Assembly (NCBI GenBank): GCA_037447605.1
Contig: CM074810.1
Location: forward strand, 1,770,880 to 1,834,879
Reading direction: 5' to 3'
DNA from: Zygnema circumcarinatum SAG 698-1b
Taxonomy: Eukaryota > Plantae > Zygnematophyceae
DNA length: 64,000 bases
Shown: in pieces, positions 3,501 through 45,723 of the stretch
Layout of the letters: each line of letters begins with the position of its first letter
How positions within the stretch are numbered: position 1 is the stretch's first letter
Translations under genes and position numbers: made by a program
Notes under the pieces: generated by a model
Database searches by the model: none
The model's input: the letters and a program-made list of their open reading frames with translations, nothing else
Told to the model about the DNA's origin: nothing

Positions 3501-6500
3501 ATATATATATCCACCTATACTAAAATGCAAGCCAAGGCCATCAGCACCAAAGTTGTCAGCAATGGGGAGTTTATGCCCACTCTGTCCGCATCAAGGTTAG
3601 CCTCTGAGAGGCTCCATCACCGGCCTGACTCGCTTAACCACTATGTTATGGTATGGTATTGTTGAATTGAAACAAATATACTATGTTCATAACGATTTCA
3701 GTAACAATGAGATATGTATTGGAGTAGAGGAACTCTTCCTGCCATTCACTATGCCAGCCTCTGAAAGGCAAAGAAACTCCGATGCTTTTTGAGTCGTTTC
3801 TTTAAGGCCATTCTACGACCTCTCAACAGCTTCAGAATACCGCAGCAGGATATAACCAGGACAAATTGATTGGCATGAATTCAAGCCAAGATTCTCCACC
3901 CACACAGCACGCATAAAATATGCATACAAAGAAGACTACCGACCACAGAGTACACAGGCAGCTCCCACTCCTACCTATGCCTGCATACTACTCAGAAACT
4001 GGAAAACACCCAAAATCCACGAACTCAAGACCTACGAACCACACAAACTTTACAACCCCAATCTGAATTCTCAAGCAGATATCGACACAATCCTAATACG
4101 CCCGTTCGAACTCCCGCTTTGTGGAAACAAGCCTCCTCCTCTCATACTTTCCGTCTAAACTAACTTTGAACGACTGCTGTCACTCAGGAGACTCCCACGT
4201 TTCATACGAAGAAATATGCATTAGTGTGAGCTTATGTACTTGCATATGTATGTACATATGTCTGTATGCGACCCGTACCTGGGTACCCATCATGGGGAAC
4301 ATAGACGGAAACATCCCAGGCATCCCCGGCTGCCCCATGCCCAATTGTCCCGCCATTTGACCTGCAGAAAAAAAATGGAAGAAACGAAAAAGGAAGCCAC
4401 CGTTTCCAGTCAGTTTTGCCGGATAAACAAAAAGATAAAAAAGGATCACTCATGAATGAGTAAACGAATGTAAGCAATGCCACATGATTTACATGACCTA
4501 AGAATGGCAGAAACAACCGAGGGGGAAATGAGGAGAACGATTAAGCAGCAAAATCATTTAGAAACTACAATCGCGTGTATGATAAAACCTTCGAGAGTTC
4601 AAAAGGAATCAGCACACAAACAGCTCGTTTTTCCCCTTTCTCCCTTCCTATTTCCCGGGGTCCCTCCCTTTCTAAGTTTCTGTCTCCTTCACCCACACCC
4701 CCCGCCGCTTCGATCTCCTTCTCCTCCCATCCCCCAATCTCCGTAAAACACGAACTCTTACAATCATGGGCGCATATATGAACACGTGAACTTATACGGA
4801 TGCAGACACAACTAACTACGTGGATATGGATGCAAGCATGCATGGATGCATGAACCGATAGGTGAAAGTACGCGTGCATGAATACACATGAATGAATACG
4901 TGCATGCATACGTGCATGAATACATTGCATTCTTATTACATTATTATTATTATTATTATTATATTATTACATTATAAGGGTGCAAGCATGCATGAAGGAA
5001 TGGATGGGGGCGCACCTATGGAGGGCATAGCGCTCGCGGTGGCAGCGGGATTATTGAGGATGCCTGCCGGTGGCGTTACCATCATACCTACCCTCGCAAG
5101 TTAGCTGGAAGCCGGCCCTCATGCCACACATGCATGCAGGTGCTGTGCTGCAGGAGGGGCAGGAGAGGGAGGACTGGAGAGAAAGAAGGGAATGGGAGGA
5201 GAGAGGAGGAAAGGGGAGGGAAAGAAATGCCGGTTCTAACACAGTAGCAGCCTCGCTACTTTTGCTGAAGACTTGGCTACTAAGGAGAGGGGGAGAATGA
5301 GGAAAATGTGGAGCGAAGTTAGGCGGTAGAACATGGGGTCGGGGAGGGGAGACGACAAGGATGGGGATGATGGATAAGGAAGACGTGAAGGGAACGGTTT
5401 CAGTTCAGCTATCTTGGACACTTTCACTTCCACTCCTCTCTAGTCTCCTTTCTTTTTGTTGATAATTCCCTAGAGTGAAGGCCAGGAGGCAGGCACATCG
5501 TCTAGATGACGAGTTCCTCAGAGCTGCACGAGTGAGGATGTGCCCAACTCCCTGGTCGCAGGCACATACTGATATGATGTCGCGTTCGGAATATGTTCAG
5601 CCTTCTTCAGCCCCAAGCAGAAGCAGAAAGACAGCACAAAACAAACACCAAAGCCAACAACACCAACGAACGACATAGAACGAGCAAGCAGAAAACTTTC
5701 AGTGATTGTCCAAAAAGCACTCCAAGTCTCGGTGTGAGAGAGAAAGGGAAATAGAGAGAGAGAAAGAGAGATCTCATATAGCTAAACGTGAATGCTATTC
5801 CTAACAAAATAGTAAGAAAAACGAAGGTCCTTCATTCACCAACCTTACACATTACCACCGCTCACCTGACCTCACCGTGACAGGAGAGAGAGAGAGAAAT
5901 AAAATTGCCATTCACATCACTTGAAGAATAGCGGAAATTGGAAAAAGTTGCCAACATCATACTATAAGTTATATAAAGTAATATACCAAAGGAGCAGGGA
6001 AATGGCAGAAAAATAACTGACCTGGCATAGCAACAGGCGTTATGGCCCCCGGGGGCGCCATGTCAAACCCACTTGTTCGCTTACTGAAAAAAAAAAAAAA
6101 ATCAGAAGTAATCCAGACCAGCAGAGAATGCGTAATAACAACTCCATAGATCTGTGCAAGAAGCAGAATCACATAGTTTGACTACAAAATTCAAACCCTA
6201 AAAACATTACAAATCCTTCAGACCATCAAGTAAAGCAAGACAAAGCGGCGGGCGAGAGCCGGGGGGGAAAATAGAGGAACCCAAAAATCAGAAAGCAGAG
6301 TCATATAACGCGCATTATGAAAGTCACCTTCTGCGGTCGCCTCTATCTCGGGAGCGAGAACGGGAGCGTGACCGTGACGTTTCGCGGGACCTCCTTCTCC
6401 TGTCCCGCTCGTGGTAGTCGCGGTCGCGTTCATGAAATTCGCGCTCGTCTCGACTGGTGCGGCTGAAACAGCAAGAAGGAGAAAAGTAAGAAAAAGGAAA

Positions 6501-19191: not shown

Positions 19192-19792
19192 GAAACAATA
19201 CAAGAAGGTCGTTACTGTACAGTACCTACTATTTGTCATTTTGAGCCTGGTAAATTTGTCGTTTAGTGCTTGCTGACGGAATATCGTATGAATAGTCGGT
19301 ATATTGAGTGTACAGGTGTGCCATTAACCGACATCTCAAAGTCGACGTTTTCCGTTTATTACCGTACGGTCTCAGTACGGACGAATCTGAAAACTAACGG
19401 CACCATACACATGTCTAATCCCACGCCGCACATCTGCAGTCAACCAATTAGAATAAGCCGTACAGCGAAACAATCTGCCGGCCGGCGATATTCGTGACAA
19501 ACTGGCGATATTCCTGACGGACAGGCGATATTTGATCCGAGGCGGCCGATACGGACCATTCCATTATTTCTTAGCGCATAAAAGGCATCGTGTTGGCGGC
19601 GTCTCCATTGCCTGACATTTATCGGATTTCACAGTAGCACGGCTCACATGGAACTGGAGCTACTCCCCCTTTTCGAAAATGTGAACGCTCCTAACAAGAT
19701 AAATCCCTCATAAAATAGGGGGTCATAATAAAACCCTAAAATTCCAAAATCCCGATTCAGTCGGGATGCGTCCCAAACCGCCCCCCGAAATA

Positions 19793-21018
19793 GGGGGAGT
19801 CAGACCTTGACCATCGCTTACGAAATTCCCGAATTCCTTATACTAAAAGTCACTACTTTCGTGTACGAATTCCGGGTCGGGATCCGCGGCTCCGCCGAGC
19901 CCAGCCGTACCGAAATGCGTGTACCTAGCCAATACTTAATTCGTCCGACAGGCTTACGAAATTGATTTGGCGATGGTCAAGGTCTTCGCAGTTCGGACCA
20001 GTGGATCGGCAACCATTGGACAACCATTGGATGGCAATGGTTGGACGTCTACTGGTTGGCAACCAGTCGACTGGTTGCCAACCAGTGGATGCCACTGGTT
20101 GGCAACCAGTCGAATGGTTGTTTCGGTTTGCAACCACTGGTTGGCAACCAGTCGAATGGTTGCCTACCAGTGGATCCACTGGTTGGCAACCAGTCGACTG
20201 GTTTGGAACCAGTGGATGCCACTGGTTGGCAATCAGTCGAATGGTTGTTTCGATCCGCAACCACTGGTTGGCAACCAGTCGAATGGTTGTTTCGATCCGG
20301 CGGCACTGGTTGGCAACCAGTCGAATGGTTATATCCATTAAATCAAATGGTTGGCAACCATTAAATCACTAGTTGTAGCGAACTGAACGCTACAGTTACC
20401 AAAATGCCGTCGGCGTTTCGGAGAAAACTATTACGGTTCGGTCGTACAGAATCTCCGTACAACCGTACGATTCGGATGTACGAATTCGTACGCATCTGTA
20501 CGGATCAGGCTTGTTACACTAGTTGTCAACGGTTGGCAACCCACCAAAAAACACATACGACCCATTTTTGCAAAAAGGCATAATTTCAGAAATTCAATGG
20601 TTGCCAACCATTGGATCACTGGTTCCGAACCAGTCGAATGGTTGTTTCAGTCCTGCGCCACTGGTTCGCAACCAGTCGACTGGTTTCCAACCAGTGGATC
20701 CACTGGTTGGCAACCAGTCGACTGGTTTGAAACCAGTGGATGCCACTGGTTGGCAACCAGTCGAATGGTTGTTTCGATCTGGCGGCACTGGTTGGCAACC
20801 AGTCGAATGGTTGTTTCGATCCGGCGGCACTGGTTGGCAACCAGTCAAATGGTTGCCAACCAGTGGCATCCACTGGTTCCAAACCAGTCGAATGGTTGTT
20901 TCGGTCCTGAGCCACTGGTTGGCAACCAGTCGAATGGTTGTTTCGGTCCGCAACCACTGGTTGCCAACCAGTCGACTGGTTTGTCTAATGGTCCGATCTG
21001 TGAAGGTCTTACTCCCCC
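19793..21018. mobile_element. Composite non-autonomous TIR element 1 (GGGGGAGT ends) carrying 42-bp arrays
   Basis: Left end GGGGGAGTCAGACCTT, right end reverse complement GGGGGAGTAAGACCTT (15/16 match). Flanks AAATA and TAATA. An internal inverted copy of the TIR-adjacent sequence lies at ~19955-19984. Confidence 0.75.
19990..20990 (+). repeat. Two direct arrays (~19990-20362 and ~20590-20990) of a ~42-bp unit with a palindromic core ACTGGTTGGCAACCAGT
   Basis: Example unit: CCACTGGTTGGCAACCAGTCGAATGGTTGTTTCGATCCGCAA. The ~14-nt variable parts are related to each other. The ORFs seen in several frames arise because 42 is divisible by 3. Confidence 0.92.
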
Positions 21019-21023
21019 TAATA

Positions 21024-24000
21024 GGGGGAGTCAGACCTTGACCATCGCCAAATCAATTTCGCCAGCCCTTCGCGCCAATTCTGCTCTGTACGGCAGGCCT
21101 TTTTCGCCAAAAGTGGACGTTCGACAGGCTCGGGCGTCACGAATTCAAGAAAGCAATTATTTTACCTTCGTATCTCCGAGCCAGGTCTGACCCCCCCCTT
21201 TTCGCCCCGCCGCGCTCCCTCCGCCGCCTGCCGCCCGCCGCCCTCCGTTTTGTCGCCACGCGCGTCACCACCGCGCGAGCGCCGTCCCACCGCGGCGCCT
21301 CGCGCCCGCCGCCTGCTCGCCTGCTAGCTCGCTGCGAGCTCAGATCTGCACGGGTTTAGGGCTTAGGGTTCCTCCCTCGCCACCGCCCGAGCCATCCTTG
21401 CAGGGGAGTGAGCAGAGCGTCGTCTCGCCTTCCCCCAGTGAACGGTGAGCGGTGAGTCGGCGACGACGGCAAAAGCGCGATCGGTTTTTAGGGACGACGG
21501 CGGACTTGAGCAGCGGTGAGTCCTTGCCCTTGCCCCTGCCCGTGCCTCCCCTGCCCCTGCTCCTGCCTCCCTTGCCTTTGCCCATGCCTCCCTTGTCTCC
21601 CTTGCTGCTGTTGCTATTGCTGCTGCTTTTTCTGCTGCTGCTGTTCTTGCTGCCGTTCGTGCTGCTGCTGGTGTTGATGTTGTTGCTGCTTTTTCTCCTG
21701 CTGTTGCTGTTGTTATAATGCTGCTGCTGCTTTTTCTGGTGCTGCTTTTTCAACTCTTGCTTTTTCTTTCCTGTTGTTGCTATTGCTGTTGTTGCTACTG
21801 TTGCTGCTGCTGCTGCTGTTGATGTTGCTGTTGCTTTTTCTGCTCTTGCCTTTTCTCCTGCTGCTCTTGCTGCTATTGCTATTGCAGTGTTGCTGCTGTT
21901 ACTCTTGCTGCTGCTGCTGCTATTCTTCTTTTTCTACTGCTGCTGCTGTTGCTGTTGTTTATGCTGCTGCTATTGTCGATGCCGCTGCTGCTGCTTTTTG
22001 TGGTGTTGCTTTTTCTGCTTTTGCTTTTATGCTGTTACTGCGGCAGCAATTTTTATTATTTTTTGGATGTTGCATTTGGTATTCTGCATTCTTCATTCCT
22101 CATTTCGCAATCCGCATTCCGCATTTTGCCTCCCTTGCCCATGCCCCAGCCTCCTTTGCCTTTGCCCCTTGCTGTGTTGCCCTTGCCTCTGTCTTCCCTT
22201 CCTTTTGCTTGTGCCTCTCATTCCTTCGCTTATGCTTTTGCTGCGTGTATGAGTGTGTGTTATTCCTTCCCCTCCCCATTAAGTCGAAGTGGCGGATTGG
22301 TTACGCAACTGTTGCAAAACAGTAGTAAAGGGGTTCAAATCCCCTCTTCGACTTGTAGTGTTTACTCATTCTTCTATTTTTATTATTTAAAGTTTTTGTG
22401 TTTTTGCTTCATATGCCAAGCATATGTTGTTATTTTTTCTAGTTGTTTTTATTCCAGCTATCCATTCTTTATTCTATATATTATTCTATATGCTTCTGCT
22501 ACTGCTATTGCTATTGCGGCATGCTTTTTCTTTTGCTGCTACATTTTGCATTCCGCATTCCCTAGTCGGCATTCCGCATTCCGCATTCTGCATTCCGCAT
22601 TCTGCATTCCGCATTCTGCATTTCGCAGTCTGCCTCCCTTGCCCTTGCCCTGCCTCCCTTGCCTTTGCCCCTTACTATGTTGCCCTTGCCTTTGTCTACC
22701 GCCTCCAGTTCCTTTGCCTATGCTTGTGTTGTGTGTATGAGTGTACGTTATTCCTCCCCTTCCAATTAAGTCGAAGTGGCGAATTGGTTACGCAACTATT
22801 GCAAAACAGTAATAAAAGGGTTCAAATTCCCTCTCCAACTTGTAGTGTTTATTCTATTTTTATTCACTTATAGTTTTGGTGTTTTTGCGTCATATGTCAA
22901 ATATTTGTTGTTATTTTTTTGTTATCTTTTTTGCTTTTTGCCTTTATTTGTTTCAATTGATAAGATTGTATAAATGTTTCTGAATCTTCCTTTAGCATAC
23001 ACAACTACTACTCTTTCTTTGTTCTTATAAAAACACATTAACGCAAATAATTCATACACATATATACATACACACAAACATATATAAAAATACTTCTTGT
23101 ATACAAAATAAAAACCTTGTCTCATTATAAAAACTTGTGCCATTCATTCTCAATTTAGTAAATACTGGCATCACTAAGACACCCCCCCCCTGCCCTCCCT
23201 CCCTCCCTCTCTCTATGCACACACTTTTTTGAGTTCTCCTATATTCTACTTTAAGCGATTCTAAATGCAAATAATATCATGTTATAACATTGATGGGTTT
23301 TTACGCTGCTCCAATAATGCGTAATCTGTGTTCTTCTTAAGAATCTTAGATTTGTCATTTCTGTTCTTCTTCTTCATCTTGGATTCGCCTTGCCTCAGTA
23401 AACTCTCATTGTTGTTTCTCCCACTCCAATTCGTTGCATCTTCACTTGAGATTCCACTTCTTGATCTTGGATTTGCCTTGCCTCAGTAAAACTCTCATTG
23501 TTGTTTCTCCCACTACAGTCTTTGTCGTTGCATCTTCACTTGAGATTCCACACAAGCCATTACTTTGTGTTTCATTTGTACATTCATGGGAGAAGCGTAT
23601 TCAATGTTCTAAATTGCGCTAAAACAACAACCCAATTCAAAGTTCAATGACATACAATCATACACACAATAGAAGCATAAGCAAAGGAAGAGGGGCACAA
23701 GCAAAGGCAAGGAAGACAAAGGCAAGGGCAACACAGCAAAGGGCAAAGGCAAGGGAGGCTGGGGCAGGAGCAAGGGAGGCAAAATGCGTATTGCAGAAAG
23801 CAGCATCAAAAACAAAAAAAAAAGAATGTTGCAACAGCAGCAAGAGCAACAGCAGCAACAGCAACAGCAGATAGGATAAAATATAGAATAAAGAGTAGAT
23901 AGATCGAATAAAAACAACTAAAAAAAAATAACAACAAATATTTGGCATATGAAGCAAAAACACAAAAAGTTTAAATAAATAAAAATAGAAAGTGAATAAA

Positions 24001-25379
24001 CACTACAAGTTGAAGAGGGGATTTGAACCCCTTTATTACTGTTTTGCAACAGTTGCGTAACCAATCTGCCACTTCAACTTAATAGGGAGAGGAAAGAATG
24101 ACATACAATCATACACACAACAGAAGCATAAGCAAAGAAACGAGGGGCAAAAGCAAAGGCAACGAAGACAGAGGCAAGGGCAACACAGCAAGGGGCAAAG
24201 GCAAGAGAGGCTGGAGCAAGTGCACGGGAGGCAGAATGCGGAATGCGGAATGCCGAATGTCGAATGCGGAATGCGGAATGCCGAATGCGGAATGGGAAAT
24301 GAAGCAGCAAAAAAAAAAAAATGAATGCTGTTGTGCAGCAAAAAAACAAAATGAATGCTGTAGCAGCAGCAACAAGAGCAGCAAGGGCAGCAACCGCAAC
24401 AGCAGCAGCAGCAGCAGGAGGAGGAGCAGGAGTGGGAGCAGGAGCAGCAGCACAGCAACAGTAGCAGCAGCAGAAAAAGAAGCAGAAGCAATAGGCGCAA
24501 CAGCAGTAGAAAAAGCAGCAGCAAAAAAAAACAGAAGCAATAAGAGCAACAACAGAAGCAGAAGCAACAGCAACAACAACAGCAGTAGTAGCAGCAGCAG
24601 CAGAAAAAGAAGCAGCAGCAGTAGCAACAGCAGAAGCAGCAGCAATAGCAACAGCAGACGCAGAAGCAGCAGCCAGCACCAGCAGCAAGAGCAGCAGCAG
24701 CACAGAAATAGCAGCAGCAGCAAAAAAAAGCACCAGCAAGAAAAGCAGCAGCAACAGCAGCACAGCAATAGCAACAGCAGCAGAAAAAGAAGCAGCAAAA
24801 AAAAACCAGCAGCAGCAGCAGCAGCAGAAAGAGCAGCAAGGGAGACAAGGGAGGCATGGGCCAGGGCGAGGGAGGCAGGGGCAGGTGCAAGGGCAAGGAC
24901 TCACCGCTGCTCAACTCCGCCGTCGTCACTTCGCGTCCTCGCTGACCACTCTCCCGTGGTGCTTAGAGGTCCGTGAGGACGCGGTTGCCGCAAGGTGGGT
25001 GTTGTTGGTGGCAGAAAGAGAAACCCTAGAACTGTGCCAGCACTGAAACGCTGCTCTGCGCGGCGGCGGGTCGCGGCGTCCGGGCGGCGGCGGTGTGGCG
25101 CTCGCACGTGCGTGACGCGCATGGCGACAAGGCGGGGCACGATTCCTCATCGGCGGAAAGCTGGAATTTCGAAACGCAGGGCCTCCGGAGGCCCTGCGTT
25201 TCGGCGAGCAGAATTCAGAAATTTGGGGACATTTTTGTAACCTATTCCGCCGTACGGACGTGACACACAGGTTCGGGGGGAGCCGCGGTTTCCGACCCGA
25301 ATTCTGCATTCGAAATCAATACCTTTTCGCCGGCGAAATCTTTCAATTCCGCCGGCGATGGTCAAGGTCTGACTCCCCC
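21024..25379. mobile_element. 4.36-kb foldback-type TIR element 2, non-autonomous
   Basis: Perfect 26-bp TIR GGGGGAGTCAGACCTTGACCATCGCC at both ends, with TAATA on both flanks (21019-21023 and 25380-25384). Inverted arms span ~21240-22930 and ~23600-25140 (e.g. 21490-21610 is the reverse complement of 24830-24930), with CTG/CAG-rich and GCATTCC repeats. An AT-rich spacer of ~0.7 kb contains a ~90-bp tandem duplication. No transposase ORF is recognisable. Confidence 0.85.
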
Positions 25380-26487
25380 TAATAGGGAGAGAAGCTTGCG
25401 AACATTCAAAGGCAGTCGGTGGCCGCCGCCGTCGTCTACGTGACCCCACCGCGTGGCTGGACCGCTCCCGTTTGGAGCGTCCAAGGTCGCGCGGCCGTTG
25501 CATGCACTCGCATGCAGCCCGCTCCATGTGACTCGCCCTGTTGACGGCAGTTTCGCAGTACCGCACGACAGTCACACGTGTAAGACCACCACGTGGTACG
25601 TTTTCCTGCGCTTGAGGCACACCGCAACCGCCTCACGACACGCCCAAATCGTACGGCGGCCAATCACAGGTCAAGGCCGAATGACTCGCGGCGGAGAGGG
25701 CGGCAAAAAAAAATTGTCGTATGCGGCGTCTGTCGGCGCAGCTGGCAACGCGGCGGCGTAGAGAGCCGTCGCCGGTCAGAGGCCCGCCGGCGGACGGGGC
25801 CCTCACCGGGCAGCCGCAAGAAATTTCCGAAAACAAGCCCGCGGCCGCGGGCGGGAGGGCCTCGCGAGAGGTGAAAACATTTTCAGTGCAGCGACCGACA
25901 TTTAGAGCAATTGTGTTATTTCTTTTCGAATCAACAGAAGAAAAAATGCAGTGTTTTTTTTTCCGCATGCATGCATGGCATGACATATGATACATCACGG
26001 CTCCATCATGCATACATGGCCAAGCCTCATCTAGATACCCGAGTGGAACATTCCATCATCCATTTGGAGTTTGCGGTCATCTTCACTATGAAATTATTTC
26101 CCAAAAGGAGCCCAACATTCGAAATTCTGTGGAGCCCGAGTCCCATAGAAAACTGCACAAGGAAAAGAGAAGCGAGAGAGGTGTAGGGAGGGCGAGATCG
26201 TAGAGAAGGAGAGAGAGAGGGGGGGGGGGGTAGGAGAGGGGAGAGTGAGGGAGAAAGGGAGAGGAAAAGAGGGAGAACGAGAGACACCAGATAGAAGGAG
26301 CGAGGGAAAGTCTGCGAGAGGGAGAAAGAGGGAAGCGAGCGAGGGGGAGAGAACGAGAGAGGGATGGGAAGGAGGAGTGAGGGAGAGAGAGAGAGAGACA
26401 CATTATGGTACACCAAAAGCTTTACACATTTTGCCCTGCTGGAACTCAGCAGAAGCCTCCTTTGATTGGGGTTCATTTTTGTGATTT

Positions 26488-36514: not shown

Positions 36515-39216
36515 TCTCTCTCTTTTCCTCTCTCTCCCCCTCACTTAACTTCTTCCTCCCTCCGCTCCCCGCTCGCACTCTCTCTCTCTCGTCCTCACCT
36601 TACTTCCCCTCCCTTCTCTCCCCTCCCCCCCTCTCTCTCTCTCCCCTTCTCTCTCTCTCTCTCTCCCCCCCCTCACCCTCTCTGTCTCCGCCTCCCTCTC
36701 TCCCCTTCTGCCTCCTTCCCTTTGTTTTTGGAAGGGCAGCTGACCCAGATCAGCGATGAAGCTTCATCCTTCTCTTCTTCCGCTTGGAGAGAATTTTGTG
36801 CTGCCCGAATCTCTGCCCTGATTGAGCCCCTCTGTCAAAAATGGGTTTTTGAAGGAACTTTTCCACGGCTCAATTCCGAATTTAATTCAGCTTCTCTTGC
36901 GGGCAGCAAAAGGAAAAAAAAAAATAGCGCAAAATTTGGTAGTGTAGATTTGTCCATAGAAAGGGATTCTTCCGTTGATTCCGTCGCCCGTAACGGAACG
37001 GAAGTGAGCGTGGAAAGTGGGGAAAGGGCAGCCAATGAGCTGCTGCCAGGTGGCAGCGCCTGGTTTGAGAACGGAGAGAACGTGGAACTGCACATAGAAC
37101 TTATTTTCTACCTTCGATTCAAGAGAATACGGTACATAAAATTTCCAGCTTTCAAAGTCCCCTTTTCTTTTTTCCCCTACCCCCTTTCCTTTTTGGGTTT
37201 ATTTATTTCATTTTCTTCTTCTTCGCGCGGGAAGTTGGGCTCAGAGACGGAAGCCCTTTTCGGGAATATTTTTTGGCAAAAAAATCGGCTGAAATTTTGG
37301 AGGATTTGGTGATTCGAATAGCGGAGGAGACGGCGGCGCTGTACCTCGACCAATGGCTGGACACCGACCGCCAGGTGGCGGCACAGGATTGGCCGGCGCT
37401 GATGCTGACGCAGTTGAGCTCCACTCGGAGACTGGAAAAGTTTCGGAACGAGGTTCGTTTTTGGGGAGCGGGAGGTGGGGNNNNNNNNNNGGGGGAGGAA
37501 GGTGGAGGAAGAGGGTGAGAGAGAAGAATAGAGAGATGGAGGGAATGGGAAGGGAAGAAGGAGCGGGCGGTTTATCAAGAGGAGGACATGGACTGGTAGG
37601 AAGGTGGAGAGGGAGGGAGGGGAGAGGCAGGAAGTAGAGGGGTAGAGAGGAGAGAGAGAGCGACATTGAGGTTGGAAGAGGGGAAGGAAAGAAATAGAGA
37701 GTGGAAGAGAGTTTCTCATTGAGAGTTTCCTCGCTGGGTCAAATTCTTGGATGTGTACCAGGTGGCGCTTCGTGGTTGGCTGCGCCGCAACTTTTTGGCA
37801 GTTTCTGCGATATATGAAGATCGATATGACTTGTGGGCTGTAGGGGAAGGGCGGTCGGGCAGCCAGAAACAAAATCAGGCTGCCCGAAATTTGAGAGGTG
37901 GGGAAGAAGAGGAAGACAGAGAGAGGAGAGACCATGATGGAAATATTTTTCAAAATCGGCGAATTTCGAGGACGGATTTTTCATCAAGCCATGGAGCTGT
38001 TGGGAAGCATAGAGCAGAAAAGAGTGGGAGGAAGGAGGGAGAGGGCTTGGGAGAGAGAGTGTGGGAGATAGGGAGGCTGTGGGAGGGAGTGATGAATAGA
38101 GGGAGGGAGAGGAGAAAGGAAACGGAAATAGTGGGTAGAGATGAGAAAAAATTAGCGAATTTGAAAATTGTACGGAAAAATATTCGGGCGAGGAGGAGCA
38201 GAGACCTCAGAACTCTCAAAGGGTGGTAAGAAAGTCTATCTCCATTCCTGTCCCGCTCTTTTCAGCGTAGGGTCTACACTAACATCATTTTTGAAATTCC
38301 TAAAAACCTTAGAAACCCCAATCCTCTAAGGACCCAAAAACTCATGATATGTCATTCACTTGATTTTTCTTTTACGTTCTAGTTTTTTGAAGGGATTGCT
38401 TCACGCTATACATAGGTATATACATAGGAAAATGATATACACCCCCCCCTTGGTTATCCCGCCCCTTTTTTTCAATCCGGTCTCCCATTTTGGCTATTCC
38501 CCCCCCCCATTTTGGATGTGTCGGGAGTAGATAACCCCTCCCCTCCTAGTCTCTCTCTCCTCTGCTCTCTCTCTCGTTTTTTCTCCTCTCCTCTGCTCTC
38601 TCTCCAAATGACTTTACGGACGTTGCGCTGATGTGTGAGAAGGAGAAAACTAGGGGGTGAATATCCAAAATGGGGGTGGGATATCCAAAACAGGGGGGTG
38701 GAATAGCCAAAATGCGAGGGTGGGATTTAAAAAAAAAAGGGGTAGGGTAACCAAAAGGGGATTTCAAAAAGGGGGGGGGTAACCAAAGGGAGGGGAGGGG
38801 GGGGTAACCAAAGGGAGGGAGGGGGGGGGGGTAACCAAAAGGAGGGGGGGGGGGGGTAACCAAATGGAGGGGGTAACCAAATGGAGGGGGTAACCAAATG
38901 GAGGGGGGGGTAACCAAATGGAGGGGGGCGATATATCATTTTCCTACATATATATATATTTTTTCTTTATTAGGTATCTATCCATCCATCCATCCATCCA
39001 TCCATCCATGTATGGTGGTCTTGGGGGGGCGCATGCAGGCGGGCCCTGTACAGTCTGTGGCTGGAGGGCCTGGACGTCCTCGCCCCGGTCCTCCGCTCCC
39101 TCCTCCGCGCGGGGGGGCAGGCCGCCGCGCTCCTCCTCGCGGGCCTCCTCGGCCGCGCGCTCGGCCTCGTCGGCCGCGGCATCCGCCAGACCTTCCAGAA
39201 GGGTGACGTCACGTGA
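35006..39216 (+). CDS. Plastid-targeted DUF3685 / Ycf55-like protein, 6 exons
   Basis: Exons 35006-35673, 35907-36280, 36735-37131, 37245-37452, 37762-38225 and 39039-39216, phases consistent. Ser/Arg-rich transit peptide. Motifs ILEDLVIRIAE, LSSTRRLEKFRNEVALRGWL, IYEDRYDLW, RSRDLRTLKGWRALYSLWLE and LLGRALGLVGRGIRQ match the plant/cyanobacterial DUF3685 C-terminus (from memory). Confidence 0.85.
38427..38944. mobile_element. MULE-family MITE (518 bp) in the last intron of the DUF3685 gene
   Basis: Termini GGAAAATGATATA...TATATCATTTTCC, with TACATA on both flanks. Shares TTGGTTATCCCGCC, TTTTGGCTATTC and ACGTTGCGCTGATGTGTGA..GGAGAAAAC with the 40450-42707 element. Carries tandem GGGGGTAACCAAA subterminal repeats. 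Confidence 0.8.
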
Positions 39217-39411: not shown

Positions 39412-40449
39412 GAGATGAGACAAGGTTAGGATGTATAGGGTGGAGAGTGTTGCTTTTTTGGGGTTTTAGGGTTTGTAGGGTGCAGAGTTTTAGGGTTTAT
39501 GGTTTAGGGTTTTGGGTTTGTAGGTGCAAGGTTCCTGGGTTCTAGAGTTGAGGTTCTAGGGTTTTGTAGGATGTAGGGTTGAGGGTTTGAAGGTTTTTTT
39601 TCTGTGGGGGGGGTAAATGGTTTCTGGCGTTAAGAATTTGGGGGCAGGGCTGATTCTTGGTTTTAGGGTTTCTAGGGTTTGTAGGGGTTCTTGAGTCTTG
39701 ATGTCGAGGGTTTGTAGGCTCTCCTGGGTTCAGGGTTTATGGGGATACCGAGGTTTTGTGGGGATTCGAGTCTTTTTAGGGGTTTAGTGATTTTAGAGTT
39801 TGCAGACATCCTATAAATTCTCATTTTAGGGTTTCTGGGGTCCTTAGGGTTCGTAGGGTTTTTAGGGTTTCCAGCGTTTCTAGGGTTCAGGGTTTTGCAG
39901 GTTCCTACGGATTCTGGGGTTCAGGAGTGCACGGTTTTGATGCAGGTCATTGGGTTGGAGAAGTTCCATGGTTCAGTTAGGGTTCGTGTGTGGAAAATGA
40001 GCTTTCAGTTGGAGAGGTGACCGGAGGCGCTATTGGAACAGACATTTTGACGGAAATTTTTGTGCATAGAAATGGAAGAGAAATGAAAGACGAGGTTCAT
40101 CTAATTGGTCAAACATGGTTTTGGTAAAAAACCATTTTTGAGGTACAAAAAGGAAAAAAGTTTGGGGTCAGCACATTTTTATATGAAGAAATTGTTTTGC
40201 TTTTATGCTTTCTATGTTGGACTGTCGACGTCAGTTTAACAGTCACCTGTTTAACGGCGCTGTTGGTGGAACTGCGAAACTGTCTCCATGAAACCCCATG
40301 GCATTAACGCAATTTGTTGTAAAAATCAAAGATATATCGTATCGACTTAGTATCGGGATATCATATCGCTAAAAAGCATATCGCAGTTTATCGTACCGTA
40401 GCGTCATATCGATTTACCAAAGTACTTCCAATAGTTTATGATAAATGAC

Positions 40450-42707
40450 GGAGAACTATATACCGCCCCCCTTTTTTGGTTATCCCGCCACTGTTTTTTT
40501 GAAATCCGACCCTCGCATTTCGGCTATTCTGCCCCCCTCCCCCATTTTGGATATTTCGGGAGGAGATCGCCCCCCTGTTTTGAATATTTCTTTCCCGCCC
40601 CTCCCGTCCTCTACCCTCCCCTCCTCTGCCCTCCCCCTCCTCTCCCCCTCCCCTTCTCGTCCTCTCCCCCTCCCCTCCCTCCCTCCCTCCCTCCCCTGCC
40701 CACCCCTCCCTCCTCCCTCCCCTCCCCTCCCCTCCCCTGCCCACCCCGCCCCTCCCTCCTGCCCACCCCTCCTCCCTCCCCTCCCCCTCCCCTCCTCCCT
40801 CCCTCCCTCCCTCCCTCCCTCCCCTCCCCTCCCTCCCCTCCTCCCCTCCCCTCCTCCCTCCCTCCCTCCCTCCCCTCCTCCTCCCCTCCCCTCCCTCCCT
40901 CCCTCCCTCCCTCCCTCCCTCCCTCCCTCCCTCCCTCCCTCCCTCCCTCCTCCCTGCCCACCCCTCCCCTCCCCTCCCCTCCTCCCTCCCTCCCCTCCTC
41001 CTCCCTCCCTCCCTCCCTCCCCTCCCCTCCCCTCCCCTCCCTCCCCTCCTCCTCCCTGCCCACCCCTCCCTCCCTCCCTGCCCTCCTCCCCTCCCTCCCC
41101 TGCCCACCCCTCCCTCCCTCCCCTGCCCACCCCTCCCCTCCTCCCCTGCCCTCCCTCCCTCCCTCCCCTGCCCACCCCTCCCCTCCCCTCCCCTGCCACC
41201 CCTCCCCTCCCTCCTCCCCTCCCTCCCCTCCTCCCTCCTCCCCTCCCCTGCCCACCTCCCTCCCTCCCCTCCCCTGCCCACCCCTCCCCTCCCCTGCCCA
41301 CCTCTCCCTTCCCTTCTTCCTCTCGGTTTGCAATCTCCACACAAATGACTGAGTATAAGTCTCGCGATGAGCTTGTACAAGTCTTGACCAAGCACTACAA
41401 GCAAGAAGGATTTCACATCAAGATCGGCAAGCATAGCGATAGCCGCCGACTCTACATGCAATGCTTTAGCGGGGGGACCTACGAGGACAGAGGTCTGGAA
41501 GAGAGTAGTAAGAAGAGGAATACTTCCAGCCGCTTGAAAAATTGCCCTTTCGAGATCAGGGCGACGTTTTCCGAGAATAAGGACATGTGGGCTGTAAAAT
41601 CTGTCGTTGAAGAGCACAACCACGTCATTTCCACTGGGTATGCTGAGAAAAGGCGCTTAGACATTCACGAGAAGGAATGTGTTCGGGAGATGGCACAAAA
41701 AAATTTATTCTCTTTTTATCCCTTTTTCTTTTGGTGGGTGTGAAGCTCTGTCATGATGTCATGGTTGGCTTGCTTGCTCGCTCTCTCTTCTCTCTCTCTC
41801 TCTCCTCTGCTCTCTCTCCTCTAGTCTTTCTCTCCTCTACTCTCTCTCCTCTGCTCATTCTCTCTCTCTCCTTTGCTCTCTCCTGTGCTCTCTCCTCTAG
41901 TCTCTCTCTCCTTTGCTCTCACTCCTCTACTCACTCTCTCTCTCTGCTTTGCTTTCTCCTCTGCTCATTCTCTCTCTCCTTTGCTCTCTCCTCTAGTCTC
42001 TCTCTCCTCTACTCTCACTCCTCTGCTCTTTCTCTCTCCTCTATACTCTCTCTCCTCGGCTCTCGCTCCTTTGCATTCTCTCTCTCTCTCTCTTCTCTCT
42101 CCTTTGCTCTCTCCCGTAGTCTCTCTCCTCTGCGCTCTCTCCTCTAGTCTTTCTCTCCTCTACTCTCTCTCCTCTGCTCATTCTCATCTGCTCATTCTCT
42201 CTCCTTTGCTCTCTCCTGTGCTCTCTCCTCTAGTCTCTCTCTCCTTTGCTCTCACTCCTCTACTCACTCTCTCTCTCTGCTTTGCTTTCTCCTCTGCTCA
42301 TTCTCTCTCTCCTTTGCTCTCTCCTCTAGTCTCTCTCTCCTCTACTCTCACTCCTTTGCTCTTTCTCTGTCACGACTGAAATCTAGNNNNNNNNNNCTCT
42401 AGTCTTTCTCTCCTCTACTCTCTCTCCTCTGCTCATTATCTCTCTCTCCTTTGCTCTCTCTTGTGCTCTCTACTCTAGTCTCTCTCTCCTTTGCTCTCAC
42501 TCCTCTGCTCACTCTCTTTCTCCGTTGCTCTCTCTCGAACGTTGCGCTGATGTGTGAAAGGAGAAAACGAGGGGGGGGGGGGGAATATCCAAAATGGGGG
42601 GGGCCGGATATTTCAAAACAGGGGGCAGAATAGCCGAAATGGGAGGGTCGGATTTCAAAAAAACAGTGGCGGGATAACCAAAAAGGGGGGGCGGTATATA
42701 GTTCTCC
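40450..42707 (+). mobile_element. Internally deleted Mutator-like element (MULE), ~2.26 kb
   Basis: Inverted termini of ~100 bp: GGAGAACTATATACCGCCCCCC...GGGGGGCGGTATATAGTTCTCC. Direct repeat TAAATGAC(G) at 40442 and 42708 (8-9 bp TSD). Contains a truncated FAR1-type DNA-binding domain. Confidence 0.9.
41345..41743 (+). pseudogene. Truncated MULE transposase N-terminus (FAR1/WRKY-GCM1-like DNA-binding domain), no DDE domain
   Basis: [12 protein letters not shown]...EGFHIKI...YMQC...RNTSSRLKNCPFEIRA...WAVKSVVEEHNH has the C-x-C-H-x-H pattern of MULE/FAR1 N-termini. The frame runs into unrelated sequence at ~41700. Confidence 0.8.
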
Positions 42708-43303: not shown

Positions 43304-45723
43304 ATGTCCTCCGCCCTCATCATGGACGCGTGGCGAAACCTGGACGCCCGCTCGATGATGTTGGCGTCGTCGGGGTTATGTTTGGCGGCGACGTTCCACA
43401 TCACTTCGCAGCACGCCCTACATCACTTCCACCATTGGACGCGGCCCCGCGAGCAGACCGCCATCCTTTGGATCATCGCAATGGTGCCGCTCTTCTCGCT
43501 CACCTCCTACGTCGGTGAGTTCAGCTAAAAACGTTTGGAGGAGCAAATTTAATCATCATTTTGTTATTAAATTTAATTTTATTTTCTTTTTTGGACTCCT
43601 GTTTGAACCTCCCCCCCATCCCCTCCCCCTTTTATTTTCTCAACACGTGGTCCCCACTTTCCCCTTTTTGATTTTCGGCTTTTCGCTGGTGGTTTCTTTT
43701 GTCGAGGGTGTCGTTTCTCGTTTTTTCTTTTGAAGCAATGGGTGGCGTTGGTTAATATTTTTAAGGCAAGGGTTTTGTAACTTTTGAGAAAATGCCGTCT
43801 GTGGCGTTTCGGTAGAGAAGGTGCATGATCGAATCGTGACACCTTGTCACGCCTATGACAATGTAGGCGAATAGTTCTGTGAATCCCTCCCTTCCTCCCT
43901 GCCTCCCTCCCTCCTTCCCTCCTTCCCTCCCTCCTTCCCTCCCTCCTTCCCTCCCTCCCTCCCTCCNNNNNNNNNNCCCTCCCTCCCTCCCTCCCTCCCT
44001 CCCTCCCTCCCTCCCTCCCTCCTCCCCTTGTTAGGCGCTTTTTGGTTATTACAGATTTTGTTTCACCGCATTTGGATTTACTTTTTTGTGTGCTCTGCCA
44101 CGTGGCGGCGCAGGATTGGTGGAAATGCCGACGTGGGAAGTCACTGTCACGATTCTTGATTCCGTTAAAGAGTGCTACGAAGCATTTGTGAGTCGAAATT
44201 TCTCCGTACATTTTTTTCCACTGTAAAAAATGATCTTAACCTTCATTCCACCGAAACGTTGACTTTCTCAGATTTCAGGTTTCAGATTTCAGATTTCAGA
44301 TTTCAGATTTCGTTTTTTCCTTTTCAGGTGATTGCAAATTTTTTGAAGCTACTGTTCAGTTACATGGGAGTCTCTCCGGATGCCAAAGTTCCGATTCCCG
44401 ATGAAATCAAGGGTCGTGTTTTCCACCACAGTTTTCCCGTCACTCTTTTCCAGGTAAAAAATAAAATAAAAAACCCATACTTCTATCAACAATTTCACTT
44501 TTTTCAGCCCCCGCCTCCCCTCAAAATTAATTTCATGTCCCGATCCCGCGTTTCTTCCTTTTTATTGCAAAAGGATTATACTACTTTCAGCCCAATTTTC
44601 CCCTTTCACTCTCCCAAACCGTACATACAATGACTATGCCCGTTGTAACCCAATCACCTCTCGCCCCAAAAACCCGTAAAACCCTAAAAACCCTATGGAC
44701 CCTGTAAACCCTAAAACCCTCAAAACCCTACAATCCCAACGNNNNNNNNNNCCCCCCCCCCCCCCCCCCCCCCCCCCATTGGTCACGGCACTCGCTTCGC
44801 TCGCTAGTTTCCCCCCCCCATTTTTCATCAATTTTCTATTATTTGGGGGCGATTTTTGAGCAGCCTCACGAAGTGATAATCAGCAGCGAATCTCTCCAAA
44901 CCCTCACAAAGTTCACCACTCAGTTTGTCGTCATCCGCCCCCTCTTCTCCGTCCTCCTCTGCGTGCTCGAACTTTTGGGTGTGAACGCACCGCCCCTCTC
45001 TTGGGTCTTCCCGGTCGTCTTCAACGCGTCCGTGTATTTGGCAATCTACGCACTCCTCCTCTTCTACCACACATTCGACAAGGAGCTCGCACCGCACAAC
45101 CCGTTGGGGAAGTTTCTATGCATTAAAGGTGTCGTGTTTTTCACATTCTGGCAGGCAAGCGCTCGCGATCTCTCTCTCTCTCTCTCACTCTTTTTCTCTC
45201 TCCCTCCCTAACTCCCTCCCTCCCTCTCCCTCCCTCTCCCTCCCTCTCCCCCTCTCCCCCTCTCCCCCTCTCCGCCTCTCCCCCTCTCCCCNNNNNNNNN
45301 NCCCCCTCCCCCTCCCAGGTTGTGTTTTTTATGAGCACTAAAAAACGAAATCAGAAAGATCCTATTTTGGTCCTATGTTCCTGTTTTCCGTTTGGCCCGT
45401 TTGACGGCGGAACTGTTCCCATGTGGCAGGGGATGGTGATCGAGCTCCTGGCGGCCAGCGGCGTGCTCCATGCGGACCAGTTCCCGTTTTCCGTTAAACA
45501 GGTCGAGGACGCAGTGCAGAACTTCGCCGTGTGCATAGAAATGCTCGTCTTCTCGTTCGCATTTTTGTACGCTTTCAGCGCGGAGGAGTTCAGTCCCTCT
45601 TATAAGCCCAAAATTGCAGCGGAAAAGAAAAAGGAAAAGGAGGAAAAAATCGACGGGAAAAAGGAGGAGAAAAATGAGAAAGAAGGGGAAAAGAAGGAAA
45701 TTGAAAATAAAAAAGAGCTTTAA
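43304..45723 (+). CDS. TMEM184 / organic solute transporter-alpha (DUF300, LAZ1-like) protein, 5 exons
   Basis: Exons 43304-43514, 44114-44187, 44328-44453, 44864-45154 (GC donor) and 45430-45723. Motifs [84 protein letters not shown] and LYAFSAEEF. Confidence 0.93.

What the first reader, a model, noticed from the sequence alone, without database searches (positions are those of the whole stretch)
19788..25384. Unclassified DNA-transposon family with GGGGGAGT ends and a 5-bp (A/T)AATA target duplication, stacked at one site
Seen: the order is AAATA [element 1, 19793-21018] TAATA [element 2, 21024-25379] TAATA. Element 2 has a perfect 26-bp TIR and an exact 5-bp TSD. The reconstructed empty site (CCCCCCG-AAATA-GGGAG) itself mimics a junction of two element ends. 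Established: eukaryotic TIR superfamilies with G-rich ends make 3-bp (Harbinger, Zator), 2-bp (ISL2EU) or 8-11-bp (MULE, Merlin) duplications, and Transib makes 5 bp but starts CAC. GGGG(G) ends with an AT-rich 5-bp TSD are the signature of the bacterial Tn3 family. Inference: this may be an undescribed family, possibly Tn3-like, that targets its own ends and builds tandem stacks. No transposase is present in the window.
Basis: partly seen in the sequence, partly recalled or inferred. Interest (0 to 1): 0.75.

Follow-up and report, generated by a model that had tools for sequence, protein, structure and literature searches.

The report
Stacked Harbinger-type transposons, misread duplication
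Two transposase-less cut-and-paste transposons sit head to tail at one site in a green-lineage genome. Shifting their ends out by one base turns the odd "5-base" target duplication into the 3-base A-N-T duplication of the known Pangu/Harbinger2 group, so this is probably an ordinary family.

Summary
The sequence facts hold. Element 1 (E1) and element 2 (E2) lie head to tail with five A/T bases at each of the three junctions, and E2 has a perfect inverted repeat.

If each element is read as A-GGGGG...CCCCC-T, both are flanked by an exact 3-bp AAT.

A 27-nt terminal inverted repeat (TIR) starting AG, with a 5'-ANT-3' duplication, is the published signature of the Pangu group of the PIF/Harbinger-ISL2EU-Spy (PHIS) superfamily, called Harbinger2 in Repbase (PMC4482050, PMC12730594).

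Nothing supports a Tn3 link. The end sequence is absent from 185,579 prokaryotic genomes and matches plasmids only at chance level. No element ORF tested matches a Pfam family.

E1 is a chimera: a ~194-bp miniature of E2 fused to a foldback of 42-bp palindromic repeats. E2 carries two mirrored tRNA-Cys-like units.

The rebuilt empty site (C-run, AAT, AGGGAG) is unique among 1,829 AAT sites in the window. An extended, end-like target preference is therefore plausible.

I could not fetch other copies or the transposase, so membership is inferred. The scan has noted likely copies of this family on other pieces of the genome (s1-400598, s1-553978, s1-400606).

The parts
19789..19791 (.). AAT, left copy of the 3-bp target duplication of E1
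   Evidence: Read directly in the sequence. It is identical to 21020-21022 and 25381-25383.
19792..21019 (+). E1, a 1,228-bp chimeric non-autonomous element. Its outer ends are AGGGGGAGT(C/A)AGACCTT, complementary at 16 of 17 nt.
19792..19985 (+). Left module of E1: a ~194-bp miniature deletion derivative of the E2 type, in opposite orientation and missing about its last ten nt
   Evidence: blastn of E1 against E2: E1 nt 1-104 match the reverse of E2 nt 4253-4356 at 72%, and E1 nt 146-193 match the reverse of E2 nt 10-57 at 85%. There is also a 16-nt internal inverted repeat at 19802-19817 / 19970-19985.
19986..21019 (+). Right module of E1: a foldback built from inverted arrays of a 42-bp double-palindromic unit. 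Its left arm begins without the terminal ~16 nt.
   Evidence: Tandem Repeats Finder arrays at 20051-20330 and 20606-20983. Inverted pair I11 at 90%. Alignment of 19962-20030 with the reverse complement of the right end.
21020..21022 (.). AAT, the single target-duplication copy shared by E1 (right) and E2 (left)
21023..25380 (+). E2, a 4,358-bp non-autonomous foldback element
   Evidence: None of its ORFs tested matches a Pfam family.
21023..21049 (+). Left TIR of E2, 27 nt, starting AG
   Evidence: 27/27 complementary to 25354-25380
25354..25380 (-). Right TIR of E2
21182..21198 (-). Internal inverted copy of the TIR core (GGGGGGGGTCAGACC, 2 mismatches), about 160 nt inside E2's left end. It gives that end a hairpin form like a miniature inverted-repeat element (MITE).
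21490..22752 (+). Left long arm of E2, rich in CTG repeats and a 7-mer array
   Evidence: Inverted match to 23646-24930 at 72% over ~1,350 nt, with sub-blocks at 82-86%
23646..24930 (-). Right long arm of E2, rich in CAG repeats
22283..22353 (+). tRNA-Cys-like unit in the left arm, with one base missing from the anticodon stem
   Evidence: Rfam tRNA 52.8 bits; ARAGORN call
24008..24078 (-). tRNA-Cys-like unit in the right arm
   Evidence: Rfam tRNA 45.9 bits. It is 96% identical to the left copy over 96 nt.
25381..25383 (.). AAT, right copy of the 3-bp target duplication of E2
19719..19788 (+). Possible relic of an older related insertion (starts AGGGGGTCA, ends CCCCCCGA), itself flanked by AAT on both sides. 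Unproven.
   Evidence: AATAGGGGG occurs only 4 times in the window, 3 of them at this locus. The flanks do not align significantly to the element arms.

Best explanation
E1 and E2 are non-autonomous cut-and-paste transposons of the PHIS (PIF/Harbinger-ISL2EU-Spy) superfamily, most likely its Pangu/Harbinger2 group.

Their true ends are A-GGGGGAGTCAGACC...GGTCTGACTCCCCC-T. A DDE transposase supplied in trans from an autonomous copy elsewhere in the genome, probably helped by a second DNA-binding protein, cuts the elements out at these ends. It pastes them into a 5'-ANT-3' target, here AAT, which is duplicated.

One element then inserted into the AAT flanking the other. The three junctions therefore read AAT | E1 | AAT | E2 | AAT. 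The 'TAATA' motif is the last T of one element, the AAT, and the first A of the next element.

PIF/Harbinger transposases read an extended target around the 3-bp core. The site used here (C-run, AAT, AGGGAG) looks like the element's own ends, so each insertion recreates a similar site on both sides. That favours stacking.

Shown:
- the anatomy;
- an exact 3-bp AAT repeat at all three junctions;
- no Pfam-recognisable coding capacity;
- the rarity of the target context.

Inferred:
- the superfamily, from the TIR and duplication signature only;
- mobilisation in trans;
- the target preference.
For: 1. All four ends carry TA outside GGGGG. With the boundary moved out by 1 nt, both elements have exact AAT duplications and share one copy at the junction.

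2. The 3-bp reading forces every other pattern seen except one host base, 25384 A. That includes the TA flanks, E2's 5/5 match and E1's single mismatch at 19788. The rival readings each need extra coincidences: the 5-bp reading needs a palindromic duplication plus a mutation, and the TA reading needs about five matching bases plus two hits 3 bp apart.

3. The Pangu group is defined by an ANT duplication (ATT, AWT or ANT across its 34 families), TIRs of 11-40 bp, and first TIR bases that are usually AG or GG. It occurs in algae, fungi and animals (PMC4482050) and equals Repbase Harbinger2 (PMC12730594).

4. PIF/Harbinger elements have a 9-15-bp extended target preference (PMC2836001). The rebuilt empty site is 1 of 1,829 AAT sites with this context.

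5. Adjacent and nested multimers of miniature inverted-repeat elements (MITEs) are common in plants (PMC5172404).

6. Short subterminal repeats are present, as in other TIR elements: TTTCGCC occurs 5 times in the terminal 300 nt of E2 against 0.1 expected.

7. Unverified leads from the same genome. These include a MITE family with AGGGCG..TCAGACT TIRs and ATT/AAT duplications (s1-397115). There is also a tRNA-Cys-like unit with a 6-nt anticodon loop inside a Harbinger element that has a transposase (s1-555084). E2 carries the same oddity.
Against: - I examined no transposase and no second copy with independent flanks.
- The 3-bp register rests on three junctions at a single locus. All three have the same AAT, so the variable middle base expected of ANT was not seen.
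- The flanks also formally allow 5-bp, 2-bp (TA) and 1-bp readings.
- Other superfamilies also make 3-bp duplications (Zator; own knowledge).
- The supporting notes from other windows are unchecked AI notes.
Confidence: 0.62

Rival explanations
1. A TIR family with a 3-bp AAT duplication that belongs to a different superfamily, for example Zator or an undescribed one, and not to PHIS/Pangu.
For: The 3-bp register is as in the best explanation. No transposase was seen, so the superfamily rests on signature alone.
Against: ANT with an AG-initial TIR is the specific Pangu signature. Earlier notes report PHIS/Harbinger elements, some with a transposase, in this genome (unverified).
Confidence: 0.12
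2. A TA-targeting (Tc1/mariner/pogo-like) family with ends at GGGGG. The two elements inserted independently into two TA dinucleotides 3 bp apart in an original GAAA-TA-A-TA-ATAGGG site.
For: TA lies directly outside GGGGG at all four ends. Pogo elements are reported in this genome (unverified).
Against: This needs about five extra base coincidences for the AAT reading to come out perfect as well, plus two independent hits 3 bp apart. G-run TIR starts are not typical of Tc1/mariner (own knowledge). A TA flank is automatically produced by an ANT target next to an A-initial TIR.
Confidence: 0.1
3. One reading: a family that truly makes 5-bp (A/T)AATA duplications, undescribed in eukaryotes and possibly related to a bacterial family such as Tn3.
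For: E2 has an exact 5/5 TAATA repeat and E1 has 4/5.
Against: - The outer bases of the 5-mer are complementary, exactly as expected if they belong to the TIR.
- E1's only mismatch is at the outermost position.
- The ends show no similarity to plasmid-borne inverted repeats.
- The 20-mer end is absent from the prokaryotic genome collection.
- The elements have subterminal repeats, foldback arms and tRNA-like cargo, typical of eukaryotic non-autonomous TIR elements.
- Tn3 shows target immunity against insertion near its own ends (own knowledge), the opposite of stacking.
Confidence: 0.05
4. The E1-E2 pair did not arise from two clean insertions. It is a rearrangement product (aberrant transposition, template switching during gap repair, or a recombination joint), and the short repeats at the junctions are incidental.
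For: E1 is itself a fusion of two truncated elements joined at a short shared motif without any duplication. So illegitimate joining has happened at this locus.
Against: The E1/E2 junction has two complete ends separated by exactly the same 3 bp that flank the outer ends. This is what insertion into a flanking duplication predicts and is unlikely from random joining.
Confidence: 0.06

Closest known systems
Pangu group of the PHIS superfamily (Han et al. 2015, Mob DNA 6:12; Repbase 'Harbinger2')
   Same: A 3-bp duplication of the form ANT (here AAT). The TIR starts AG and is 27 nt long, within the 11-40 range. Non-autonomous derivatives exist. The group is present in algae.
   Different: No transposase or second ORF was seen here. 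The ANT middle base was seen only as A. The long foldback arms and tRNA-like cargo are family-specific extras.
Canonical PIF/Harbinger and Tourist MITEs (PIF, mPing/Ping/Pong)
   Same: G-rich TIR starts, a 3-bp duplication, an extended target preference around the core, trans-mobilised miniature derivatives, and adjacent or nested multimers.
   Different: Their duplication is TWA (TAA or TTA). No register of the present flanks gives TAA or TTA on both sides.
Bacterial IS5 family
   Same: The same ANT target and G-initial ends. Pangu is the eukaryotic clade placed next to IS5 (PMC4482050).
   Different: The present elements are eukaryotic, kilobase-sized and non-coding foldbacks. The end sequence is absent from the prokaryotic genome collection.
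Tn3 family
   Same: Only a G-run at the tips and, in one register, five A/T bases repeated.
   Different: Tn3 inverted repeats are ~38 bp (own knowledge). No sequence similarity was found, and there is no TnpA or resolvase. Tn3 avoids targets that already carry its ends.

Membership tests
PHIS superfamily, Pangu/Harbinger2 group | 3-bp target duplication of the form 5'-ANT-3' | tested here: met
   AAT at 19789-91, 21020-22 and 25381-83, exact for both elements once the ends are set at A...T. Caveat: this is one locus, and other registers are formally possible.
PHIS superfamily, Pangu/Harbinger2 group | TIR of 11-40 bp whose first two bases are usually AG or GG | tested here: met
   E2 TIR is 27/27 and starts AG. 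E1 is 16/17 and starts AG. The criterion is from PMC4482050.
PHIS superfamily, Pangu/Harbinger2 group | Autonomous copies encode a DDE_Tnp_4 / DDE_Tnp_1_6 transposase (usually with a second ORF) that falls in the Pangu clade | not testable with these tools
   There is no transposase in these elements.
PHIS superfamily, Pangu/Harbinger2 group | Duplication confirmed by paralogous or orthologous empty sites | not testable with these tools
   The window has no second copy or empty site.
Canonical PIF/Harbinger | TWA (TAA/TTA) duplication | tested here: not met
   No boundary register gives TAA or TTA on both sides.
ISL2EU | 2-bp AT duplication (PMC4482050, Table S2) | tested here: not met
   With ends at A...T the flanks are AT on the left and AA on the right.
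Tc1/mariner/pogo | TA duplication | tested here: inconclusive
   TA flanks all four ends at the GGGGG register. This is also forced by an ANT target next to an A-initial TIR.
Tn3 family | 5-bp duplication | tested here: inconclusive
   E2 is 5/5 and E1 is 4/5. The outer bases are complementary and fit the TIR as well.
Tn3 family | ~38-bp terminal repeats related to those of other Tn3 members, and presence in bacteria or plasmids | tested here: not met
   The TIR is 27-28 nt. blastn of the end against 72,556 plasmids gave only chance hits, with best E 0.3. The 20-mer had 0 hits in the prokaryotic genome collection.
Tn3 family | TnpA (DDE_Tnp_Tn3) transposase | tested here: not met
   No such domain in 44 window ORFs scanned: 40 of the 60 ORFs of 150 aa or more, plus 4 shorter ones inside the elements. 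Absence from the whole genome is not testable.
Transib | 5-bp duplication with CAC... termini | tested here: not met
   The termini are (A)GGGGG. The criterion is from own knowledge.

The most novel reading that the evidence does not exclude
The 5-bp reading is right after all. This would be a eukaryotic TIR family that makes (A/T)AATA duplications, is catalysed by a transposase outside the known eukaryotic superfamilies (for example a bacterial-type DDE enzyme), and homes to its own ends.

A milder and more likely version (about 0.25) is a Pangu-type family whose extended target (C-run, AAT, AGGG) is recreated by its own termini. Each insertion would then create two new preferred sites, and the elements would build head-to-tail stacks.
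Probability: 0.05. Interest if true: 0.8.

Novelty: new member of a known kind. Interest (0 to 1): 0.22.

Why it matters
The main value is as a correction. An apparent new transposon class with a 5-bp duplication and G-run ends disappears when the inverted repeat is extended by one base, which matters for anyone curating this genome's repeat library.

If the assignment holds, it adds large foldback derivatives with tRNA-like cargo to the little-studied Pangu/Harbinger2 group in a green-lineage alga. It also gives a concrete, testable case of a PIF/Harbinger-type extended target that resembles the element's own ends, which could explain multimer formation.

Tried and rejected
- **Other copies in the window.** Self-blast of both elements found nothing outside the locus except low-complexity hits. 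A scan for the 15-mer end allowing 4 mismatches gave only purine-tract noise and three short, unpaired end-like matches at 19670, 21198 and 25539.
- **Public collections.** The 20-mer end gave 0 hits in metagenome, prokaryotic-genome and viral contigs. The degenerate 17-mer gave 46 single hits in metagenomes. None had an inverted partner or extended the match, so all are chance. I took none of these contigs for human DNA.
- **Protein routes to other copies.** A word search with the ORF that reads through E2's right TIR into the flank found nothing, not even itself. Flanks of other copies could therefore not be read from proteins.
- **The search of earlier findings by sequence** returned nothing.
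- **Homology of the flanks to the element arms** (the 'third element' idea). Local alignment scores were at shuffle level, so the relic at 19719-19788 rests only on the recurrence of AATAGGGGG.
- **Coding capacity.** None of the 14 element ORFs scanned matched a Pfam family above threshold; one sub-threshold DUF1720 hit at E 0.046.
- **Similarity to Tn3 ends in plasmids.** Chance-level only.
- **Literature.** A search for the PIF 9-bp target consensus string found no paper, so I cite the extended preference from PMC2836001. A search for Zator termini gave no usable statement.
- **ARAGORN 'tRNA-Ala' calls inside E1's palindromic repeats.** Rfam does not support them.
Full report
**1. Observation**

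- AAATA at 19788-19792
- E1 at 19793-21018
- TAATA
- E2 at 21024-25379
- TAATA at 25380-25384

E2's ends are complementary at 26 of 26 positions. E1's ends share 16 nt with one mismatch. The exact 16-mer end occurs four times in the window, all at this locus, plus one 2-mismatch copy inside E2 at 21182-21197. Self-blast found no other copy in the 64 kb.

The window looks eukaryotic and repeat-rich, with green-lineage genes such as DUF7796 and an ATG5 exon. Earlier notes call the organism a streptophyte alga. I did not verify that.

**2. The boundaries are one base too far in**

All four ends read TA-GGGGG on their own strand. E2's maximal inverted repeat is therefore 28/28 (21022-21049 against 25354-25381). 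My TIR/duplication scan skipped the pair for this reason: it reports only inverted repeats that cannot be extended outward, and only duplications of 2 bp or more.

The flanks are compatible with four registers:

| Element ends | Duplication | E1 | E2 |
|---|---|---|---|
| GGGGG...CCCCC | 5 bp | AAATA vs TAATA, 4/5 | 5/5 |
| GGGGG...CCCCC | 2 bp, TA | exact | exact |
| A-GGGGG...CCCCC-T | 3 bp, AAT | exact | exact |
| TA-GGGGG...CCCCC-TA | 1 bp, A | exact | exact |

In the 3-bp register the locus reads AAT (19789-91) | E1 (19792-21019) | AAT (21020-22) | E2 (21023-25380) | AAT (25381-83).

By parsimony the 3-bp register wins. If it is true, it forces the TA flanks, E2's 5/5 repeat (bar one host base, 25384 A) and the position of E1's 'mismatch'. 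The other registers each need extra coincidences:
- The 5-bp register needs a duplication whose outer two base pairs happen to be complementary, plus a mutation at exactly the outermost base.
- The TA register needs about five further matching bases and two independent insertions 3 bp apart.
- The 1-bp register needs two further matching bases and has no known enzyme family behind it.

This weighing is inference, not a computed likelihood.

**3. Comparison with known families**

Han et al. 2015 (PMC4482050) define six groups in the PHIS superfamily by their duplications:
- PIF/Harbinger: TWA
- ISL2EU: AT
- Spy: none
- NuwaI: CWG
- NuwaII: TNA
- Pangu: 5'-ANT-3'

Pangu TIRs are 11-40 bp, and their first two nucleotides are 'usually AG and GG'. 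Pangu families occur in two algae, in fungi, a heterokont and animals. In their tree Pangu lies next to bacterial IS5, which shares the ANT target. Kojima's 2025 paper (PMC12730594) equates Pangu with Repbase Harbinger2.

The elements here have a 27-nt TIR starting AG and an AAT duplication, which fits this signature. They do not fit canonical Harbinger (TAA/TTA), ISL2EU (AT) or Transib (CAC ends).

Membership still lacks its decisive feature, the transposase.

**4. Tests of the Tn3 idea**

- The 20-nt end is absent from one genome for each of 185,579 bacterial and archaeal species, from JGI metagenomes and from IMG/VR viral contigs.
- A 52-nt query across the E2 end gave only chance-level hits against 72,556 plasmids, with best E 0.3 and none in an annotated transposon.
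- Of 44 window ORFs scanned against Pfam, none has a Tn3, Harbinger, MULE-catalytic or Tc1/mariner transposase domain. That set is 40 of the 60 ORFs of 150 aa or more, plus four shorter ORFs inside the elements.
- The only transposon-type domain found is a FAR1/AFT DNA-binding domain in a separate element.
- The internal anatomy is that of eukaryotic non-autonomous TIR elements (section 5).

**5. Anatomy**

E2 is 4,358 bp. It has the following parts:
- 27-nt TIRs.
- Subterminal short repeats: TTTCGCC occurs five times in the terminal 300 nt against 0.1 expected.
- An inverted copy of the TIR core about 160 nt inside the left end.
- Two long inverted arms (21490-22752 and 23646-24930) that match at 72% overall and 82-86% in sub-blocks. 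They are rich in CTG/CAG repeats and 7-mer arrays.
- An AT-rich centre of about 0.9 kb.

Each arm carries a tRNA-like unit, at 22283-22353 (+) and 24008-24078 (-), scoring 52.8 and 45.9 bits against Rfam tRNA. The anticodon region is GCA (Cys-like), and one base is missing from the anticodon stem. The two copies are 96% identical over 96 nt. All seven differences are C>T or G>A transitions, and one pair of them is compensatory in the acceptor stem.

E1 is 1,228 bp and is a chimera:
- 19792-19985 is a miniature of the E2 type containing both E2 ends with the interior deleted. It lacks about its last ten nt.
- It is fused directly, with no duplication, to a foldback of inverted 42-bp double-palindromic repeats. 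The left arm of that foldback starts about 16 nt short of the end.
- The chimera's outer ends are intact, so it could still move as a unit.

**6. Mechanism**

The steps below are inferred.
- A PHIS-type DDE transposase made by an autonomous copy elsewhere recognises the AGGGGGAGT... ends. Where tested, canonical PIF/Harbinger members also need a second DNA-binding protein (PMC2836001).
- It excises the element and integrates it at an ANT, duplicating the three bases.
- One element integrated into the AAT flanking the other, which gives a single shared AAT at the junction.

PIF/Harbinger elements have a 9-15-bp extended target preference (PMC2836001). The rebuilt empty site, CCCCCCGA-AAT-AGGGAGAG, is the only one of 1,829 AAT sites in the window with a C-run just upstream and AGGG just downstream. 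It resembles the junction of two element ends (...CCCCCT-AAT-AGGGGG...).

An insertion therefore recreates a similar site on each side, which would favour stacks. Adjacent and nested MITE multimers are already well known in plants (Jiang and Wessler 2001, as reviewed in PMC5172404).

A 70-bp segment just to the left (19719-19788) begins AGGGGGTCA, ends CCCCCCGA and is also flanked by AAT on both sides. It may be an older, decayed member of the stack. The 9-mer AATAGGGGG occurs only four times in the window, three of them here. However, the flanks do not align significantly with the element arms, so this stays open.

**7. Leads from earlier notes (all unverified AI notes)**

The scan has noted what look like other copies of the E2 family on other pieces of this genome:
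- a ~4-kb 'TA-flanked' foldback with two dead tRNA-Cys copies (s1-400598);
- a 4.47-kb CTG/CAG foldback (s1-553978);
- a 5.1-kb foldback with tRNA cargo (s1-400606).

It has also noted an element built from double-palindrome units like E1's right module (s1-337045).

Three other notes describe TIR families with AAT/ATT or '1-bp' duplications. One has AGGGCG..TCAGACT TIRs (s1-397115, s1-406484, s1-549388). Their titles prompted me to try the 3-bp register.

One note (s1-555084) places a tRNA-Cys-like unit with a 6-nt anticodon loop inside a Harbinger element that has a transposase, about 835 kb beyond this window. E2's unit folds the same way if the first and last loop bases pair. If that element has the same TIRs, it is the autonomous partner. 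I could not fetch it.

**8. What could not be done**

- No tool here reaches the rest of this eukaryotic genome.
- The word-based protein search with a TIR-spanning ORF returned nothing.

**9. Verdict**

- The sequence observation is real.
- The '5-bp duplication' most likely comes from placing the boundaries one base too far in.
- The elements most likely belong to the known Pangu/Harbinger2 group of PHIS transposons: confidence about 0.6 for that group, and somewhat higher for PHIS as a whole.
- The Tn3 link is not supported.
- What remains mildly interesting is the end-like extended target and the stacking, the chimeric E1, and the conserved tRNA-like cargo.

Noticed in passing
window 22283-22353 (+) and 24008-24078 (-): Two convergent tRNA-Cys-like units lie in E2's mirrored arms (Rfam tRNA 52.8 and 45.9 bits), each with one base missing from the anticodon stem. 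They are 96% identical, while the arms overall match at 72-86%. All seven differences are C>T or G>A transitions, and one pair is compensatory in the acceptor stem.
   Followed up: partly
window 40450-42707: A separate Mutator-like (MULE) element. It has 87-nt TIRs (98%) starting GGAGAACTATATACC and an exact 8-bp duplication TAAATGAC. Its ORF at 40445-41743 carries an AFT/FAR1 (WRKY-type) DNA-binding domain, and no catalytic domain was found in the ORFs scanned. A third TIR-like copy lies at 38692-38756.
   Followed up: partly
window 19719-19788: A 70-bp segment that starts AGGGGGTCA, ends CCCCCCGA and is flanked by AAT on both sides, directly left of E1. It may be a decayed third member of the stack. 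It is supported only by the recurrence of AATAGGGGG (3 of 4 window occurrences are at this locus).
   Followed up: partly
window 39824-39885 and 44664-44725: Inverted tracts of telomere-like TTTAGGG-variant repeats, about 4.8 kb apart, bracketing the MULE-like region.
   Followed up: no
window 20023-20202: ARAGORN calls two overlapping 97-nt 'tRNA-Ala' genes inside E1's 42-bp palindromic repeats. Rfam does not support them, so they are probably artefacts of the palindromes.
   Followed up: yes
window 25170-25203: A perfect 34-nt palindrome (G+C-rich hairpin) in E2's right subterminal region.
   Followed up: no
window 19661-19670 and 21190-21203: Two end-like C-runs (ACTCCCCCT and GACCCCCCCC) are each followed by TTTTCG. 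The first lies 120 nt left of E1 and the second inside E2. There is no paired end, and this may be chance.
   Followed up: no
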